A stretch of 64,000 nucleotides of DNA, taken from Octopus sinensis (taxonomy: Eukaryota). This document shows, in pieces, positions 3,313 through 60,390 of this stretch. How positions within the stretch are numbered: the stretch's first letter is position 1; each line of letters starts with the position of its first letter. The position numbers were made by a program, and so were the translations under genes. Under the pieces are notes generated by a model. That model made no database searches, was not told where the DNA came from, and worked only from the letters and a program-made list of their open reading frames with translations. The stretch covers positions 206,584,001 through 206,648,000 of the forward strand of contig NC_042998.1 of the NCBI RefSeq assembly GCF_006345805.1, given 5' to 3'.

Positions 3313-3676
3313 GCCCAAACTTTTAATTAGCCAAGCAAAAGTTTATCCCCAGAAAATAGTCTTTAATTTTTTTAATTTCAATTCCAGAAAGCCTGTTTCT
3401 TCAACGATTAAAAATTAAAATTATAAATATTTTCCAATTAACTGAATTAATAATATGTTATAATTAAACACATATCATTTTAACCTGGATATAAATTGAA
3501 TAAAACCAAATATAAATTCCCAAGTTCTGCCACCTTATTAACACCTTAATTACAATCGTTATTTTTTAATTGCAAAAATATAAAAAAATAATATTTTGGT
3601 CGTTGTTGGAAGTTAAGGGTCCGTGAGTTCAAACCTGAAAAGGAAAAATATGAAATAAATAAGTTAAGTGGCTTAC

Positions 3677-3727
3677 TTTGTGGAAAACCATCCGTCTGTG
3701 TTTTTTGTTCTCTTGGTGAAAATCCAT
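3677..3727 (-). CDS. Candidate first coding exon of an unidentified gene (MDFHQENKKHRRMVFHK)
   Basis: Minus strand has ACCATGG start context at 3727 (in-frame upstream ATG at 3748), 17 open codons in non-repeat DNA, then an AAA|GTAAGC donor at 3676. No homology recognised. Confidence 0.4.
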
Positions 3728-3799
3728 GGTAAACGAAGTTATGGTCATAATGGAAAAACAAAAATGTCTTTGAGAGTTTGGTGTCAGGGCGCCGAGTGT

Positions 3800-4144
3800 G
3801 TGTGTGTGGAGAGAGAGAGAGAGAAAGAGAGAGGGGGTGTTGTGGTGGTGGTAGGAGTAAAGAGGAAAGAGCAAGGGAGGGAGTGGGGGGAGAAAGTATA
3901 AGAACTATTAAGGAAAATGAAAGGGAGATGGGGGAGGAAAATTGAGAGGATGAGAGTGAAATTAAACCAGCTGTAGCGGAGGTTGGCTTTTATCTTCTTT
4001 CTTTCTATAGATAGAAAGATTAAGAGAGAGAGAGATTGAGAGAGAGAGAGAGAAAGAAAGAGAAAGAGAGAGAGCTCGATAGCTAGAAAGATGGATAGAT
4101 AGATATAGACAGAAAAATAAATGCAAATAGATAGACAAATAGAA

Positions 4145-22561: not shown

Positions 22562-23338
22562 TATTTCTTTTCTACCCACAAGGGGCTAAACACAGAGAGG
22601 ACAAACAAGGACAGACAAATGGATTAAGTCGATTACATCGACCCCAGTGCGTAACTGGTACTTATTTAATCGACCCTGAAAGGATGAAAGGCAAAGTCAA
22701 CCTCGGCGGAACTTGAACTCAGAACATAACGACGGGACGAAATACCTACTTCTTTACAACCCACAAGGGGCTAAACATAGAGGGGACAAACAAGGACAGT
22801 CAAACGGATTAAGTCGATTACATTGACCCCAGTGTGTAACAGGTACTTATTTAATCGACCCCCGGAAGGATGAAAGGCAAAGTTAAGCTTGGCAGAGTTT
22901 GAACTCAGAACGTAATGGCAGACGAAATACCTATTTCTTTACTACCCACAAGGGGCTAAACACAGAAGGGACAAACAAGGACAGACAAATGATTAAGTCA
23001 ATTATATCGACCCCAGTGCATCACTGGTACTTAATTTATCAACCTCGAAAGGATAAAAGGCAAAGTCGACTTCGGCGGAATTTGAACTCAGAACGTAGTG
23101 ACAGACGAAATACCTATTTCTTTACAACCCACAAGGGGCTAAACATAGAGGGGACAAACAAGGACAGACATAGGTATTAAGTCGATTACATCGACCCCAG
23201 TGTGTAACTGGTACTTATTTAATCGACCCCGAAAGGATGAAAGGCAAAGTCAACCTTGGCAGAGTTTGAACTCAGAACGTAATGGCAGACGAAATACCAC
23301 TTAGCATTTCGCCCGGTGAGCTAACGATTCTGCCAGAA
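22562..23338 (-). mobile_element. SINE family B tetramer (about 183-bp units)
   Basis: Four head-to-tail units starting near 22562, 22744, 22929 and 23112; only the 5'-most unit keeps the full head. Confidence 0.9.
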
Positions 23339-28249: not shown

Positions 28250-28832
28250 TGGATGGGGACAGCATAAACTACCTGCATCAACTTGCTATAAAAACAGGCA
28301 GTAATTTTACCTTGTACTTATTCTTAGTGCAAGTCTTGAAGAGTGCAGTTCGATTTTTCAAAGCTTTAATAGAAGTGACAACAGAGTATATTCGGCACAT
28401 TTTGCTTTATGAGTTCAATAAAGGCAATAAATAACACAATGGAAAGTGCAAGGAATATTAATGCAGTATATGGGGATCGGACAATAAACGTAAGCCGGTG
28501 TCAACGGTGGTTCCAGAAATTCCAAGCCAGAAACTACAGGCTAGAAGATGGGCCTTTTCCGGGGAGATCTGTAGAGCTCAACAAATATGTCCTGCAAACC
28601 CTAGTCGAACAGAATGCCATCATAACTGTTGAGGAACTAGCAGAGAAGCTAGGATTTGGTCATTCAACCATTCATTGACACTTGCATGCCATAAGAAAAG
28701 TCAGCAAATTGGGTCGTTGGGTTCCTCACAAACTTTCTGAGTCTAATTGTGTGCAGAAAGTGAATGTGTGCTCATCTTTGCTGTCACATTTCATGAATGA
28801 ACCTTTTTTTTGGACTGAATAATGACTGTGTG
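28250..28832 (+). mobile_element. Mariner (Hsmar/Mos1-type) transposase N-terminal pseudogene
   Basis: IRHILLYEFNKG...CQRWFQKF...LEDGPFPGRS...TVEELAEKLG...KLGRWVPHKL (WVPHEL-like motif), with frameshift and stops. Confidence 0.9.
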
Positions 28833-29005: not shown

Positions 29006-32000
29006 CAAAAGGTGGGCAACTTTAGTCAAAAAGTTAAATTCATTAACTGTTAATCTGTTTAAAAAAGTTAACTTCGATAACCGTTCATCAGCAAATTCTT
29101 GAAGAAGGCAACGGAAGTTATCAATAAACTGTTAATGTTAATTTTTATTATAGAAAAAAAAAAAAAATCAGATTTTGCTCTAAAAGCATCTGAAAACACT
29201 TTTTAAAAGTGTCAAAACTATAAAATCAGCCTTTTTTTTTTGTCCTTTTAAGGAGTTTAGAACCCCAAAACTATAGTTTTTGTTTTGCTTTAGAGTTTTA
29301 AAAAATGCTGATTTTATAGTTTCAAATTTTAAAAGACCAAAAAAAAAAATGGTTGATTTCATAGTTTTGACCCTTTTTTAGGTTTTTAAAGGCTTTTAGA
29401 GCCGGAAGAGGGTCAAAAAATAAAGCTCAAATGAAACACAATATTAGTGTCAAGCTGAAAAAGTTTATTGATAAAGCGGCCATAAAAATATAAAAATATA
29501 AAAATATAAAAATTTTGAAAATGAAAAACACAAATTATGCATAATTTAATCTTTCCTCTTCTTCTCATTCATTTAGTCTTTCCTCTTCTTCTCATTCATT
29601 TAATCTTTCCTCTTCTTCTCATTCATTTAGTCTTTCCTCTTCTTCTCATTCATTTAGTCTTTCCTCTTCTTCTCATTCATTTAGTCTTTCCTCTTCTTTT
29701 CATTCATTTAGTCTTTCCTCCTTTCTCTTCTTCTCATTCATTTAGTCTTTCCTCTTCGCTCATTCATTAGTTCTTTCCTCTTCTTCTCATTCCTTATTTA
29801 GTCTTTCCTCTTCTTCTCATTCATTTAGTCTTTCCTCTTCTTCTCATTCATTTAGTCTTTCCTCTTCTTCTCATCATTAGTCTTATCCTTCCTCTTCTTC
29901 TCATTCATTAGTCTTTCCTCTTCTTTCTTCTCATTCATTTGTCTTTTCCTCTTCTTCTCATTCATTTAGTCTTTCCTCTTCTTCTCATTCATTTAGTCTT
30001 TCCTCTTCTTTTCATTCATTTAGTCTTTCCTCTTCTTCTCATTCATTTAGTCTTTCCTCTTCTTCTCATTCATTTAGTCTTTCCTCTTCTTCTCATTCAT
30101 TTAGTCTTTCCTCTTCTTTTCATTCATTTAGTCTTTCCTCTTCTTCTCATTCATTTAGTCTTTCCTCTTCTCATTCATTTAGTCTTTCCTCTTCTTCTCA
30201 TTCATTTAGTCTTTCCTCTTCTTCTCATTCATTTAGTCTTTCCTCTTCTTCTCATTCATTTAGTCTTTCCTCTTCTTCTCATTCATTTAGTCTATCCTCT
30301 TCTTCTCATTCATTTAGTCTTTCCTCTTCTTCTCATTCATTTAGTCTTTCCCCTTCTTCTCATTCATTTAGTCTTTCCCCTTCTTCTCATTCATTTAGTC
30401 TTTCCTCTTCTTCTCATTCATTTAGTCTATCCTCTTCTTCTCATTCATTTAGTCTTTCCTCTTCTTCTCATTCATTTAGTCTTTCCCCTTCTTCTCATTC
30501 ATTTAGTCTTTCCTCTTCTTCTCATTCATTTAGTCTATCCTCTTCTTCTCATTCATTTAGTCTTTCCTCTTCTTCTTCATTCATTTAGTTTCTCTTTCCT
30601 CTTCTTCTTCTCATCCTTTAGTCTTTCCTCTTCTTCTCTCTTCTTCTATTCTTTATCTTTCTCTTCTCTCATTCATTTAGTCTTTCCTCTTCTCTCTCAT
30701 TCATTTAGTCTTTCCTCTTCTTCTCATTCATTTAGTCTTTCCCCTTCTTCTTCTTCTCATTCATTTAGTCTTTTCTCTTCTTCTCTCATTCATTTAGTCT
30801 TTCCTCTTCTTCTCATTCATTTAGTCTTCCCCTCTTCTCATTCATTTAGTCTTTCCTCTTCTTCTCATTCATAGTTAGTCCTTCTTCATCCTCTTCTTCT
30901 CATTCATTTAGTCTTTCCTCTTCTTCTCATTCATTTAGTCTTTCCTCTTCTTCTCATTCATTTAGTCTTTCTCCCCTTCTTCTCATTCATTTAGTCTTTC
31001 TCTTCTTCTCATTCATTTAGTCTTTCCTCTTCTTCTCATTCATTTAGTCTTTTCCTCTTCTTCTCATTCAGTTAGTCTTTCCTCTTCTTCTCATTCATTT
31101 AGTCTTTCCCCTTCTTCTCATTCATTTAGTCTTTCCTCTTCTTCTCATTCATTTAGTCTATCCTCTTCTTCTCATTCATTTAGTCTTTCCTCTTCTTCTC
31201 ATTCATTTAGTCTTTCCCCTTCTTCTTCATTCTATTCATTTAGTCTTTCCTCTTCTTCTCATTCATTCTTCTCATCATTTATCTATCCGCTTCTTCATTC
31301 ATTTAGTAGTCTTTTCCTCTTCTTCTCATTCATTTAGTCTTTCCTCTCTTCTTCTCATTCATTTAGTCTTATCCTCTTCTTCTCATTCATTAGTCTTTCC
31401 TCTTCTTCTCATTCATTTAGTCTTTTCCTCTTCTTCTCTTTTCTTCTCTTCATTTAGTCTTTCCCCTTCTTCTCATCATTTAGTCTTTCCTCTTCTTCTC
31501 ATTCATTTAGTCTATCCTCTTCTTCTCATTCATTTAGTCTTTTCCTCTTCTTCTCATTCATTTAGTCTTTCCCCTTCTTCTCATTCATTTAGTCTTTCCC
31601 CTTTTCTCATTCTTTAGTCTTTCCTCTTCTTCTCATTCATTTAGTCTATCTCTTCTCTCATTCATTTAGTCTTTTTCTCTTCTCTTCTTCTCATTCATTT
31701 AGTCTCCCCTTCTTCTCATTCATTTATCTTTCCTCTTCCTCTTCTTCTCATTCATTTAGTCTATCCTCTTCTTCTCATCATCATTAGTCTTTCCTCTCTT
31801 CTTCTCAATTCATTTAGTCTTTCCTCTTCTTCTCATTCATTTAGTCTATCCTCTTCTTCTCATTCATTTAGTCTTTCCTCTCTTCTCATTCATTAGTCTT
31901 TCCTCTTCTTCTCATTCATTTAGTCTTTCCTCTTCTTCTCATTCATTTAGTCTATCCTCTTCTTCTCATTCATTTAGTCTTTCCTCTTCTTCTCATTCAT

Positions 32001-32950
32001 TTAGTCTTTCCTCTTCTTCTCATTCATTTAGTCTTTCCTCTTCTTCTCATTCATTTAGTCTTTCCCCTTCTTCTCATTCATTTAGTCTTTCCTCTCCTTC
32101 TCATTCATTTAGTCTTTCCTCTTCTTCTCATTCATTTAGTCTATCCTCTTCTTCTCATTCATTTAGTCTTTCCTCTTCTTTCATTCTCCATTTTGTTCAT
32201 CAGGTGCATGTTTCCCTTCATGAAAATTAGCACATCAAAGTTTTCATCAAACGGGGTTGATCTCCTGGCCCTCACGATGTCCTTACCCATAGAGAACAAA
32301 CGCTCCATTGCAACACTGGAACAAGTCCACCAACACTTGCTCACCCAAGAAGGCAGTATCTGTCAGAAAGTCCTTGGGGTCGGCCTCCAACAAGGTCTTG
32401 ACCAAATCCTGGGCCTTGTTCCTGAGTGACCTGTGATTCCTACTCTCCTCTTTTGGCTGGGTGACCCCACTAAAGGAGTCATCCTCCTCCTCTTCATTGT
32501 TGCTGCCTCCACTGTTGCTGCTCACTTTGTCTGACTGCTGCATCATGGCCTCCTCGACCTTACCGTCCGTGTTTTCCTTCACCTTGGCGACCTTGGTGCT
32601 GTCATACTTATCCAACCAGATGAGGCAAAACCTGGGATGGAAGGCAGCAGCCACCTGGCATTCCTCATCCTCCAGAAGGGTCCTAAACCTTTTGTTGATG
32701 CCTGCCAAAAGTGTGTCGACCAAAGGGTTGCAGTAGACAAGGGCCTTGAACTTCAAGTCCTTCAGCCTAAAGGTTGTCACAGCAACTTGAATTAACGGAA
32801 GTTAACTCAAGTTGACTTCAGTTAACGAAAGTTAATTCGCCTGATAATGACTTCTAAAATTAACTTAGAAGAGGTTAAATCGTTAATGAAAATGTTAACT
32901 TTGTCAATTAATGATTAACAGATTAATGGTTTGGTGCCCAGCCAGGTTTG
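29006..32950 (-). mobile_element. hAT transposon deletion derivative: transposase C-terminus plus internal satellite
   Basis: Ends CAAAAGGTGGGCA / GTGCCCAGCCAGGTTTG and GTTAAC-rich subtermini shared with 59122-60080; minus ORFs ...AAAFHPRF... and SSVAMERLFSMGKDI...NFDVLIFMKGN (hAT dimerisation motif) at 32159-32780. Confidence 0.85.
29541..32182. repeat. 27-bp tandem satellite (CATTCATTTAGTCTTTCCTCTTCTTCT)n, roughly 95-100 units by length
   Basis: Direct inspection; very homogeneous to about 30600, more degenerate from 30600 to 31900. Confidence 0.97.
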
Positions 32951-32999
32951 TATATATATATATATATATATACACATATATATACATACATGTACATAC

Positions 33000-33060
<61 letters not shown>

Positions 33061-33086
33061 TACATACATTTACATATATATATATA

Positions 33087-34258
33087 TCATCATGATCATC
33101 ATCGTTTAACATCCGCTTTCCATGCTAGCATGGGTTGGACGATTTTGACTGAGGGCTGGCGAAAGATGGCTGAACCAGGCTCCAATCATGATCTGGCAGA
33201 GTTTCTACAGCTGGATGCCCTTCCTAATGCCAATCACTCCAAGAGTGTAGTGGGTGCTTTTTAATTGCCACCGGCACGGGTCCAGCCAGGCAGTACTGGC
33301 AATGACCTCGCTCGAATCTTTTTACACATGCCACTGGCACAGGTGCCAGTAAGGCAACGTTGGTAATGATCACGCTCAAATGGTGCCCTTTTACGTGCCA
33401 CCGGCATGGAAGCCAGTTGGCTGTTCTGGCAACGATCACGCTCAGATGGTGCTCTTGGCACCCTACTAGCACGGGCACAAGTGCCAGTAAGGCAATGCTG
33501 TAACAATCACACTCGAATGGTGCCTTTTATGTGCCACTGGTACGGAAGCTGGTTAGCCGCTCTGTCAACGATCACACTCGTATGATGCTCTTTGCACCCT
33601 GCTAGCACGGATGCCAGTCATCGAATTTGATTTTAATTTCACTTGCCTCAACAGGCCTTCGCATGCAGAGTTTAATGTCCAAAGAAGGAAAAGGTATGCA
33701 TAAGTGGGCTGGTTACACCTCTGGCATAGGCCATGGGTTATGATCTCACTTGGCTTGCCAGGTCTACTCAAGCACAGCATATTTCCAAAGGTCTCAGTCA
33801 CTAGTCATTGCCTCGGTGAGGCCTAATGTTCGAAGGTTATGCTTCACCACTTAATCCCAGGTCTTCCTGGGTCTACCTCTTCCACAGGTCCCCTCAACTG
33901 CCAGGGTGTGGCACATTTTCACACAGCTATCCACATCCATTCTCACCACATTGCCATACCAGTGCAGTCATCTCTCTTGCACACCACATCTGATGCTTCT
34001 TAGGTCCAACTTTTCTCTCAAGGTACTTACACTCTGTCGAGTATGTACACTGACATTACACATCCAACGGATCATACTGGCTTCATTCCTTGCGAGCTTA
34101 CGCATGTCCTCAGCAGTCATGGCCCATGTTTCACTGCCATGTAGCATGGCTATTCTTACACAAGCATCATATAGTCTACCTTTTACTCTGGGTGAGAGGC
34201 CTTTTGTCACCAGCAGAGGTGAAAGCTCTCTGAACTTTGCCCAGGCTATTCTTATTGT
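33087..34258 (-). mobile_element. RTE-clade LINE, 5'-truncated (RT C-terminus, subrepeat-rich 3' UTR, (GAT)n tail)
   Basis: IRIAWAKFRELSPLL...KGRLYDACVRIAMLHGSETW...GRGRPRKTW...WKYAVLEKTWQAK*. Confidence 0.92.
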
Positions 34259-56082: not shown

Positions 56083-56505
56083 ATGGCAGCAAGCTGGCAG
56101 AAATGTTAGTGTGCTGGGCAAAATGCTTAGCGGTATTCCGCCTGTCTTTAAGTTCTGAGTTCAAATTCTGCCGAGGTCAACTTTGCCTTTCATCCTTTCG
56201 AGGTCGATTAAATAAGTACCAGTTACACACTGGGGTCGATATAATCGACTTAATTCGTTTGTCTGTCCTTGTTTGTCCTCTCTGTGTGTTTAGCCCCTTG
56301 TGGATAGTAAAGAAATAGGTATTTCGTCTGCCGTTATGTTCCGAGTTCAAATTCCGCCGAGGTCAACTTCGACTTTCATCCTTTCGGGGTTGATTAAATA
56401 AGTACCAGTTACGCACTGGGGTCGATATAATCAACTTAATCCGTTTGTCTGTCCTTGTTTGTCCTCTCTGTGTTTAGCTCCTTGTGGGTAGTAAAGAAAT
56501 AGGTA
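56083..56505 (+). mobile_element. SINE family B dimer
   Basis: Full monomer plus a headless monomer joined by GTAAAGAAATAGGTATTTCGTCTGCC. Confidence 0.92.
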
Positions 56506-59121: not shown

Positions 59122-60080
59122 CAAAGGTGGGCACCGTTAATTGAAAAGTTAACTTCGTTAACTGTTAATCTGTTCACCAAAAAGTCAACTTTGATAACCG
59201 ATAATCAGTTAATTATTTCCTATTGTAACAGAAGTTATTGATAAGCCATTAACGTTAATTTTTCATCATCATCATCATCATCATCATCGTTTAACGTCCG
59301 CTTTCCATGCTAGCATGGGTTGGACCGTTTGACTGTGGGCTGGCAAACCAGATGGCTGCACCAGGCTCCAGTCTGATCTGGTAGAGTTTGTACAGCTGGA
59401 TGCCCTTCCTAACGCCAGCCATTCCGAGAGTGTAGAGGGTGCTTTTACGTGCCACCGGCACGGGGGCCAGTCAGGCGGTACTGGCAACGACCTCACTCGA
59501 ATCCTTTTACACATGCCAACGACACAGGTGCCAGTAAGGTGGTGCTGGTAATGATCACGCTCGAATGGTACCTCTTACATGCCACCAGCATGGAGGCCAG
59601 TTAACCGCTCTGGCAATGATTATGCTCGGATGGTGCTCTTAGCACCCTACTAGCACGGGGCACAAGTGCTAGTAAGGCGATGCTGGTAACAATCACACTT
59701 GAATGGTGTCTTTTATGTGCCGCTGGCACAGAAGCCAGTTAGCCGCTCTGTCAACGATCACGCTCGTATGGTGCTTGTGCCCCTCATCGAATTTCACTTT
59801 GATTTTGATTTTGATTTTTATTAAAGAAAAAGCAAAAAACCAGTTTTTGCTCTAAAAACACCATTAAAAAGCGCCAAAACTATAAAATCCATTAACTTCA
59901 ATTCAATTGAAGTTAACGGAAGTTAACTCAAGTTGACTTGAGTTAATTAAAGTTAATTGTAACAGAAGTTAATTAGTCCGATAATGATTTCCAGAGATAA
60001 CCTAAAAGTTAAATTGTTAACGAAAATGTTAACTTTGTTAATTAACAATTAGTGGATTAACAGTTTGGTGCTCAGGTTTG
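59122..60080. mobile_element. Non-autonomous hAT of the same family as 29006-32950, with an RTE 3' UTR inserted (about 59265-59820, minus)
   Basis: TIR CAAAGGTGGGCACC / GGTGCTCAGGTTTG; both GTTAAC-rich subtermini match the 29-33 kb element; no transposase or satellite. Confidence 0.85.
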
Positions 60081-60134: not shown

Positions 60135-60390
60135 TTCATCATCATCATCACCATCATTTAATGTCTGCTTTCCATGCTGGCATGGGTTGGACGGTTTGAC
60201 TGGGGTCTGGCAAGCCAGGAGGCTGCACCAGGCTCCAATCTTCATCTGGCAAAGTTTCTACAGCTGGATACCCTTCTTGATGCCAACCACTCCGAGAGTG
60301 TAGTGGGTGCTTTTTACATGCCACTGGTACAGGGGCCAGTCAGGGGGCACTGGCATCGACCACCCACGAATGGTGCTATTTATGTGCCAT
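60135..60390 (-). mobile_element. RTE 3' UTR fragment
   Basis: Family similarity. Confidence 0.85.

What the first reader, a model, noticed from the sequence alone, without database searches (positions are those of the whole stretch)
29006..32950. A 2.6-kb satellite born from the stop-codon region of a hAT transposase; each unit is a complete start-to-stop mini-ORF
Seen: the transposase ends AAT GAA AGA AGA GGA AAG ACT AAA TGA (stop at 32159-32161) and runs directly into tandem ATG AGA AGA AGA GGA AAG ACT AAA TGA (MRRRGKTK*), joined TGA-ATG. The AATGA repeats bounding the founding 27-mer give a slippage seed. The array lies wholly between the element's two ends, and the sister copy at 59122-60080 has both ends but neither transposase nor satellite. 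Inference: satellite birth inside a transposon that could still be carried in trans. A read-through transcript would be a long array of basic micro-ORFs; the opposite strand is stop-free (LLLIHLVFP)n for hundreds of codons. Function is unproven.
Basis: partly seen in the sequence, partly recalled or inferred. Interest (0 to 1): 0.75.

Follow-up and report, generated by a model that had tools for sequence, protein, structure and literature searches.

The report
Minisatellite grown from dead hAT remnant
A 27-base piece covering the last codons and stop codon of a broken, octopus-type hAT "jumping gene" has been copied about 96 times in a row at this one locus; this is a clear but ordinary case of a tandem repeat born inside a transposon, and nothing suggests a function.

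Summary
The array is real: 29544-32186, period 27, about 96 units, found nowhere else in the window. It lies inside a TIR-bounded element (29006-32950) and abuts the end of a minus-strand ORF.

The origin claim holds. Three related Octopus copies have the same flanks on both sides but only one copy of the 27-mer. That 27-mer is the transposase's basic tail NEKKRKN, its TAA stop and a few more bases. It matches the array consensus at 26 of 27 positions in O. sinensis.

Several details need correcting:
- The "transposase" is only the C-terminal ~30%, with an out-of-frame deletion. It belongs to a ~1.27-kb non-autonomous deletion family that has transposed; an O. vulgaris copy has a perfect 8-bp TSD.
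- The ancestral frame of the unit is (M)NEKKRKD*, not MRRRGKTK*. A 1-nt deletion in the first unit shifts this copy's ORF.
- Only 43 of 96 units are intact mini-ORFs.
- The "AATGA seed" is circular reasoning.
- The TIRs are degenerate, and none of the six related copies examined carries the array.

Best reading: a private, neutral minisatellite grown by slippage and unequal exchange in an 85%-purine tract. It is a new member of a known kind, of low to moderate interest.

The parts
29006..32950 (-). Whole non-autonomous hAT element. The transposase reads on the minus strand. About 1.3 kb is element sequence and 2.64 kb is array.
   Evidence: With the array collapsed to one unit, it aligns end to end with O. 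vulgaris L002 5855-7093 (77.7% identity, a single HSP) and with L003 and L001. The ends match the sister copy.
29006..29020 (+). 3' terminal inverted repeat, CAAAAGGTGGGCAAC. The family form is CAAAGGTGGGCACC, so this copy has one inserted A and one substitution.
   Evidence: The same terminus is found at L001:6892-6904, at L002:7103-7115 and in the sister copy at 59122.
29021..29543 (-). 3' UTR and subterminal region of the element. It includes an imperfect palindrome (arms 29205-29281 and 29301-29377) and GTTAAC-type subterminal motifs.
   Evidence: Collinear with L001 and L002 from the stop codon to the TIR at 79% column identity. The palindrome was found.
29544..32186 (-). 27-bp minisatellite of about 96 units. 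The minus-strand consensus is GAATGAGAAGAAGAGGAAAGACTAAAT. It includes the proximal 26-nt unit (32161-32186) that carries the 1-nt deletion.
   Evidence: 30 units are exact consensus and 57 are 27 nt long. Indel-rich degenerate blocks lie at about 31610-31810, 31230-31450, 30590-30900 and 29740-29960. The minus strand is 85% purine.
32159..32161 (-). TGA that ends the ORF in this copy. It is created at a unit junction. The ancestral stop is the TAA three bases upstream, in another frame.
32162..32795 (-). C-terminal remnant of the hAT transposase. It corresponds to residues 467-671 of the 677-aa relative P0014. Frame A spans 32283-32795 and frame B spans 32162-32344. An out-of-frame deletion near 32319-32325 removes the IKFNTAIP codons.
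   Evidence: Pfam Dimer_Tnp_hAT scores only E=0.086 on this copy. A profile of long relatives hits the Hermes transposase at E=1.6e-23.
32796..32932 (-). 5' subterminal region, fused directly to the transposase remnant. This is the internal-deletion breakpoint shared with L002.
   Evidence: In both the window and L002 the tblastn match starts at P0014 residue 467.
32933..32950 (+). 5' terminal inverted repeat, GGTGCCCAGCCAGGTTTG (reverse complement CAAACCTGGCTGGGCACC). It carries a 4-bp CTGG duplication relative to L002 and the sister copy.
59122..60080 (+). Sister copy. It is a MITE-like further-deleted derivative with both ends, no ORF and no array. A ~540-bp SINE-like repeat is nested at 59263-59800.

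Best explanation
This is a locus-specific minisatellite that grew in place inside a dead, internally deleted hAT transposon of an Octopus-like genome.

The founder segment was 27 nt long. It covered the last seven codons of the transposase (the basic tail N-E-K-K-R-K-N), the TAA stop and a few following bases. Lys, Arg and Glu codons are all purines, so this stretch is a 17-nt polypurine run. I infer that this run is prone to polymerase slippage or template switching.

A first tandem duplication made a 27-nt direct repeat. Replication slippage and unequal sister-chromatid or allelic exchange then expanded and partly homogenised it to about 96 units. The edge units escaped homogenisation.

The start-to-stop appearance of the units is a by-product. 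The unit is 9 codons long, it carries the ancestral TAA, and each unit junction (TAAAT|GAAT) creates both an ATG and a TGA.

Shown here: the array, its flanks, the single-unit state in related copies, hAT ancestry, and the remnant status of the gene. Inferred: the mechanism of expansion, neutrality, and immobility.
For: 1. The array is confined to one place in the window.

2. Both junctions are collinear with single-unit relatives.
- Proximally, the sequence matches through ...FMKGNMHLMNKMENE.
- Distally, the last unit plus TTATGCATAATTTGTGTTTTTCATTTT... continues through the whole 3' UTR to the TIR at 79% identity.

3. The single-copy sequence in O. sinensis L003, GAATGAGAAGAAGAGGAAAAACTAAAT, matches the unit consensus at 26 of 27 positions. 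L001 matches at 24 of 27.

4. Protein relatives from three Octopus species end NEKKRKN* or NEKKN*.

5. Distal units 96 and 98 keep a T at the position (GATTAAAT) where L001 and L002 also have T.

6. No array is present in L001-L005 or in the sister copy.

7. The tract is indel-prone in relatives too.
- L002 has a 6-nt deletion inside the tract and an (AT)7 run right after the stop.
- L001 has an (AT)13 run in the 3' UTR.

8. L002 shares the window's deletion breakpoint and has a perfect 8-bp TSD, CTATTTAG. The deletion derivative therefore transposed before the array arose.

9. Variant units show a weak 4-unit periodicity: 4 of 16 informative pairs at lag 4 against 0.95 expected, P about 0.01. 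This fits unequal exchange of blocks.

10. Neither strand forms hairpins (0 kcal/mol). This fits a polypurine-driven rather than a hairpin-driven process.
Against: - The source genome could not be searched, so other arrays of this 27-mer, or a satellite-bearing subfamily, cannot be excluded.
- Only six related copies were examined: five fetched loci and the sister copy.
- No microhomology is visible at the founder junction in the diverged relatives, so the first duplication step is unexplained in detail.
- The lag-4 periodicity is borderline once eight lags are considered.
- The indel-rich blocks could be long-read noise rather than real decay, so unit counts and array length are provisional.
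- Neutrality is assumed from the absence of any supporting signal. It was not tested with expression data.
Confidence: 0.85

Rival explanations
1. The array is a constitutive cargo of a mobile hAT subfamily, like the tandem-repeat-carrying non-autonomous elements of bivalves. Transposition would then seed the 27-mer satellite around the genome.
For: - The array lies wholly between recognisable TIRs.
- The deletion family has transposed: L002 has a TSD.
- Tandem-repeat-carrying non-autonomous elements are well documented in molluscs (PMC7492417).
Against: - None of the five fetched related copies, nor the sister copy, carries more than one unit.
- The window copy's TIRs are degenerate and no TSD is recognisable: CATGACTA against TATATATA, 4 of 8.
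- Two metagenome scans for the unit junction found nothing, although that collection is a poor proxy for an octopus genome.
Confidence: 0.07
2. The array, or most of its length, is an assembly artefact: a short repeat over-expanded by long-read assembly.
For: Four blocks of units are riddled with small indels in a homopurine context. This is the typical error profile of uncorrected long reads.
Against: - Both flanks are correctly placed and collinear with relatives.
- Clean blocks carry ordered point variants (T, G and A types) rather than random noise.
- A 2.6-kb array is easily spanned by single long reads.
Confidence: 0.05
3. The array is functional. A read-through transcript would yield basic micropeptides (MRRRGKTK or MNEKKRKD), or the array would act as a small-RNA or chromatin element.
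For: The consensus unit is an ATG-to-stop 9-codon ORF in two of the three minus-strand frames.
Against: - Only 43 of 96 units keep the MRRRGKTK-type ORF.
- The upstream gene has lost its 5' two-thirds and its frame, and any promoter that lay in the deleted part went with it.
- The ORF property follows automatically from the unit length and the junction sequence.
- No homologous array was seen in relatives.
Confidence: 0.03

Closest known systems
Transposon-derived minisatellites and satellite DNAs (reviewed in PMC9659126). Examples: PisTR-A from the Ogre 3' UTR, the CficCl-61-40 satDNA from the CACTA Jozin Tnp2 transposase, and LINE ORF2-derived repeats.
   Same: A short internal segment of a transposable element is tandemly amplified. 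Non-autonomous elements and 3' regions are the commonest sources. ORF-derived monomers are documented.
   Different: The source here is a hAT element of a cephalopod, and the monomer straddles the stop codon. Only one 2.6-kb array is known, so it is a minisatellite and not a demonstrated genome-wide satellite.
TPE repeats of the hAT element hobo in Drosophila (PMC4807377)
   Same: A tandem repeat of variable copy number arises by slippage inside a hAT transposase ORF.
   Different: hobo's repeat encodes Thr-Pro-Glu inside the ORF of an element that is still tracked in natural populations. The octopus repeat is a 27-nt unit containing the stop codon, present in about 96 copies in a dead deletion derivative.
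Satellite-like arrays carried by non-autonomous mobile elements in molluscs (Helentron-associated repeats in Crassostrea gigas, PMC7492417)
   Same: A mollusc genome in which a tandem array sits between the ends of a non-autonomous DNA transposon.
   Different: In the oyster the arrays are a constitutive, family-wide feature spread by the element. Here the six related copies examined lack the array, and the superfamily differs (hAT, not Helitron/Helentron).
Ac/Ds-type internal deletion derivatives of hAT elements (my own knowledge of the maize Ac/Ds system)
   Same: The element keeps both termini and part of the transposase gene. A sister copy has shrunk to MITE size. At least one member with the same breakpoint transposed and made an 8-bp TSD.
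   Different: No autonomous partner of this subfamily was retrieved, and the window copy's termini are degenerate.
Alu-derived (GAA)n and A-rich repeat expansions (cited in PMC9659126, refs 67-69)
   Same: A purine-rich tract inside a transposable element is the seed of a tandem expansion.
   Different: Those are 1-3-nt microsatellites. This is a 27-nt unit.

Membership tests
hAT superfamily transposon | Transposase homologous to hAT transposases (RNase-H-like DDE core plus C-terminal hATC dimerisation domain) | tested here: met
   The window fragment alone scores Pfam Dimer_Tnp_hAT at E=0.086, below the cutoff. Relative P0007 passes at 23.6 against 21.4 bits, and 10 of 22 long relatives match. 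A profile of 22 long relatives hits the Hermes transposase (6dww, 4d1q, 2bw3) at E about 1e-23. The window holds only the part matching residues 467-671 of the 677-aa P0014, at 50% identity.
hAT superfamily transposon | 8-bp target-site duplication | tested here: inconclusive
   The related copy L002 has a perfect CTATTTAG/CTATTTAG duplication. In the window copy the flanks are CATGACTA and TATATATA (4 of 8), and the right flank is a (TA)n microsatellite. In the sister copy they are ACGATGAC and ACAACTCT (3 of 8).
hAT superfamily transposon | Short terminal inverted repeats | tested here: met
   The left end is CAAA(A)GGTGGGCA(A/C)C and the right end GGTGC(C/T)CAG(CCAG)GTTTG. The same termini occur in L001, L002 and the sister copy. 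They are imperfect in the window copy.
Autonomous (transposase-competent) element | Complete, uninterrupted transposase ORF | tested here: not met
   The N-terminal ~466 residues are absent, and an out-of-frame deletion removes IKFNTAIP.
Transposon-derived tandem repeat (minisatellite) | Head-to-tail array whose monomer is homologous to a segment present once in related transposable-element copies with the same flanks | tested here: met
Satellite DNA in the strict sense | High genomic abundance, meaning long arrays and/or many loci | not testable with these tools
   The source genome is not searchable here. There is one 2.64-kb array in the 64-kb window. Two metagenome scans and a search with the array's translated repeat peptides found nothing, but none of these is informative.
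Tandem-repeat-carrying mobile element family (bivalve MITE or Helentron type) | The array is present in many members of the family with variable copy number | tested here: not met
   L001-L005 and the sister copy lack the array. The sample is small.

The most novel reading that the evidence does not exclude
The 27-mer is not private to this locus. Instead, this element or a close ancestor founded an array-bearing hAT subfamily, or the monomer has begun to form arrays elsewhere. That would be a caught-in-the-act case of a cephalopod satellite born from a transposase stop-codon region and spread by transposition.
Probability: 0.08. Interest if true: 0.55.

Novelty: new member of a known kind. 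Interest (0 to 1): 0.3.

Why it matters
This is an unusually clean before-and-after example of tandem-repeat birth. The single-unit ancestral state survives in related copies with both flanks intact, so the founder segment can be defined almost to the base.

It also suggests why this spot expanded: a basic Lys/Arg/Glu protein tail is necessarily encoded by a polypurine tract. That makes it useful as a teaching case and as a marker (VNTR) locus in octopods.

It does not reveal a new kind of element, mechanism or function.

Tried and rejected
1. I searched the 5.8-billion-protein set with both stop-free plus-strand frames of the array, (LVFPLLLIH)10 plus (FSLSSSSHS)10, hoping to find other arrays through miscalled ORFs. 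8000 word candidates were collected and none scored, probably because of composition-bias filtering. The result is uninformative.

2. Two metagenome scans with unit-junction patterns of 29 nt and a degenerate 25 nt gave 0 hits. The collection is not an octopus genome.

3. Single-sequence searches were too insensitive. P0014 had no PDB, Pfam or NCBIfam hit, and only the profile search worked.

4. Hairpin-driven slippage is rejected: four units fold at 0 kcal/mol on either strand.

5. The rival that the array pre-existed and the ORF merely ends in it is rejected by the single-unit relatives.

6. The AATGA...AATGA direct repeat as a slippage seed is rejected. In single-unit copies TAAAT is followed by T(G/A)T.

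7. tRNA content of the window, checked for the 185-bp repeat: none.

8. I did not try to identify the source species. None of the top hits was a protein encoded by the window itself. The best relatives are from Octopus vulgaris, O. sinensis and O. bimaculoides.
Full report
**Observation**

The window is eukaryotic and very rich in microsatellites and SINE-like repeats. Tandem Repeats Finder reports one large array at 29544-32186: period 27, 95 copies, 88% matches, score 3887. The minus-strand unit GAATGAGAAGAAGAGGAAAGACTAAAT occurs 63 times with up to 3 mismatches. All matches lie between 29544 and 32160 on the minus strand, against 0 expected in shuffles, and none lies elsewhere in the 64 kb.

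On the minus strand an ORF (32159..32344) ends ...FMKGNMHLMNKMENERRGKTK* with its TGA at 32159-32161. It is followed directly by ATG AGA AGA AGA GGA (A/T)AG ACT AAA TGA units. The plus strand has a 311-codon stop-free ORF, (LVFPLLLIH)n.

**Array anatomy**

I parsed the array into 96 units.
- 30 units are exact consensus and 57 are exactly 27 nt.
- 43 units are intact ATG-to-stop 9-codon ORFs in the MRRRGKTK frame.
- The recurrent 'T' variant (GGATAGAC) reads MRRRG*.
- Clean blocks alternate with four indel-rich blocks.
- Point variants show a weak 4-unit periodicity. At lag 4, 4 of 16 informative pairs agree against 0.95 expected (P about 0.01, uncorrected for eight lags).
- The minus strand is 85% purine and the array is 34% G+C.
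- Neither strand forms any hairpin.

**What the "transposase" is**

The coding sequence next to the array is a remnant. It runs in one frame from about 32795 to about 32320 and in another from about 32344 to 32159. Aligned with relatives, it lacks the codons for IKFNTAIP together with a frameshift. It covers only residues 467-671 of a 677-aa full-length relative, P0014 from Xiphophorus, at 50% identity.

The closest proteins are gene models on similar remnants in Octopus vulgaris, O. sinensis and O. bimaculoides, at 64-71% identity.

hAT ancestry is secure for the family, though not from this fragment alone.
- Pfam Dimer_Tnp_hAT scores E=0.086 on the window fragment.
- It passes the cutoff in relative P0007 and matches 10 of 22 long relatives.
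- A profile of those 22 relatives hits the Hermes transposase structures at E about 1e-23.

**The element**

The termini are CAAAAGGTGGGCAAC at 29006 and GGTGCCCAGCCAGGTTTG ending at 32950. The same termini occur in the sister copy (59122-60080) and in two O. vulgaris loci.

With the array collapsed to one unit, the window element aligns in a single HSP with L002 5855-7093 at 77.7% identity. That alignment crosses the junction where the 5' subterminal region is fused to transposase residue 467. L002 (5843-7115) is flanked by a perfect 8-bp duplication, CTATTTAG.

So the window element belongs to a ~1.27-kb non-autonomous deletion family that transposed as such. The sister copy is a further-deleted, MITE-like derivative with a ~540-bp SINE-like repeat nested in it.

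The window copy itself looks old and probably immobile.
- Its 5' TIR carries a 4-bp duplication.
- Its 3' TIR has an indel and a substitution.
- No TSD is recognisable: CATGACTA against TATATATA.

**Origin of the monomer**

This is the key result. O. vulgaris L001 and L002 and O. sinensis L003 carry the same coding end, the same 3' UTR and the same TIR, but a single copy of the segment:
- L001: ...ATG GAG AAC GAG AAG AAG AGG AAA AAT TAA ATT GTG...
- L003: ...AAT GAG AAG AAG AGG AAA AAC TAA ATT ATG...
- L002 is the same with a 6-nt deletion.

The L003 27-mer matches the array consensus at 26 of 27 positions, and L001 at 24 of 27. The window's proximal junction aligns with these copies up to the unit. 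The distal junction aligns from the last unit through about 520 bp to the TIR, at 79% column identity. No array is present in any of the five fetched loci. Proteins from three Octopus species end NEKKRKN* or NEKKN*. The array is therefore an in-place amplification of the last seven codons, the TAA stop and the next few bases.

1. The ancestral frame of the unit is N-E-K-K-R-K-(N/D)-TAA. The window ORF reads NERRGKTK-TGA only because the proximal unit has lost one G (GAGAAG became GAAAG).
2. The consensus unit is an ATG-to-stop ORF in two minus-strand frames, MRRRGKTK* and MNEKKRKD*. Each junction TAAAT|GAAT creates an ATG and a TGA, and the unit is exactly nine codons long. The mini-ORF property is therefore an automatic by-product.
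3. The proposed AATGA...AATGA slippage seed is circular. In single-unit copies the unit is followed by T(G/A)T, and I see no microhomology at the founder junction in the (diverged) relatives.

**Mechanism (inferred)**

A basic Lys/Arg/Glu tail is necessarily encoded by purines. The founder therefore holds a 17-nt polypurine run (GAGAAGAAGAGGAAAGA) next to an A/T-rich 3' UTR.

The same region is visibly unstable in relatives. L002 has a 6-nt deletion within the tract and an (AT)7 run after the stop, and L001 has an (AT)13 run downstream.

I propose three steps:
- a first 27-nt tandem duplication by slippage or template switching;
- expansion by further slippage and unequal exchange, which the weak 4-unit periodicity supports;
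- partial homogenisation that spares the edges. Distal units 96 and 98 keep a T at the position (GATTAAAT) where L001 and L002 also have T.

Hairpins play no role. Triplex formation by the polypurine tract is plausible but untested.

**Comparison with known cases**

Tandem repeats born from transposable elements, including from ORFs and 3' regions and mostly from non-autonomous elements, are well documented (PMC9659126). Within hAT, hobo carries a copy-number-variable TPE repeat in its ORF (PMC4807377). In molluscs, satellite-like arrays ride on non-autonomous Helentrons (PMC7492417).

This case differs in source (a cephalopod hAT), in the exact segment (it straddles the stop codon), and in being so far a single-locus array that is absent from related copies. 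It is a new member of a known kind.

**Limits**

- The source genome, its reads and its expression data were not available.
- Attempts to find other arrays indirectly were uninformative.
- Array length and the indel-rich blocks need read-level confirmation.
- Whether an autonomous partner exists is unknown. The only near-full-length relative fetched (L005, from an unnamed ENA assembly) is frame-broken and lacks this C-terminal tail.

**Verdict**

The claims about the slippage seed, mobility and micro-ORFs are not supported. The best explanation is a neutral, private minisatellite in a dead hAT remnant (confidence 0.85). Interest is 0.3.

Noticed in passing
Protein P0001 (UniRef UPI00358E27E8): A 339-aa protein labelled Myxine glutinosa (hagfish) is 70% identical to the window remnant. 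It shares the exact NEKKRKN* tail with the Octopus copies. This could be contamination of that assembly or horizontal transposon transfer.
   Followed up: no
window 22562-23298 and 56132-56505: A 185/186-bp tandem repeat is present four times at the first site and twice at the second, in reverse orientation. The unit contains a tRNA-T-arm-like motif (GTTCAAATTCCGCC), so it may be another SINE-derived tandem array in the same window. ARAGORN finds no tRNA.
   Followed up: partly
window, 15 places including 33086-33610, 59263-59800 and 60136-60371: An abundant SINE-like repeat begins (CAT)n-CGTTTAACGTCCGCTTTCCATGCTAGCATGGGTTGGAC. One copy is nested in the sister hAT element. Another lies just past the (TA)n that abuts the array-bearing element.
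   Followed up: partly
window 32951-33087: A (TA)n-rich microsatellite starts exactly at the element's 5' end, which obscures any target-site duplication. It may have grown from the TSD, or the element may have inserted into it.
   Followed up: no
L002:6618-6645 and L001:6659-6685: In the O. vulgaris relatives, small (AT)n runs have grown in the same 3' UTR. L002 also has a 6-nt deletion inside the purine tract (NEKKN*). The region is slippage-prone across copies.
   Followed up: yes
L005:3021-6160 (ENA ERZ20067936, ptg000431l): This is a near-full-length but frame-broken copy of the same hAT clade (tblastn of P0014 residues 24-663). Full-length relatives also occur in platyfish (P0014) and the flatworm Macrostomum (P0024), so the clade is widespread in Metazoa.
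   Followed up: partly
window 28500-28800: A mariner/SETMAR-like transposase remnant with in-frame stops lies just upstream of the element. I judged this by eye from the translation and did not search it.
   Followed up: no
window 29205-29377: An imperfect 77-nt-arm palindrome (70% complementary) lies in the element's 3' UTR. It is conserved in L001 and L002. In L001 part of it is also present as an inverted duplicate at 3601-3883.
   Followed up: partly
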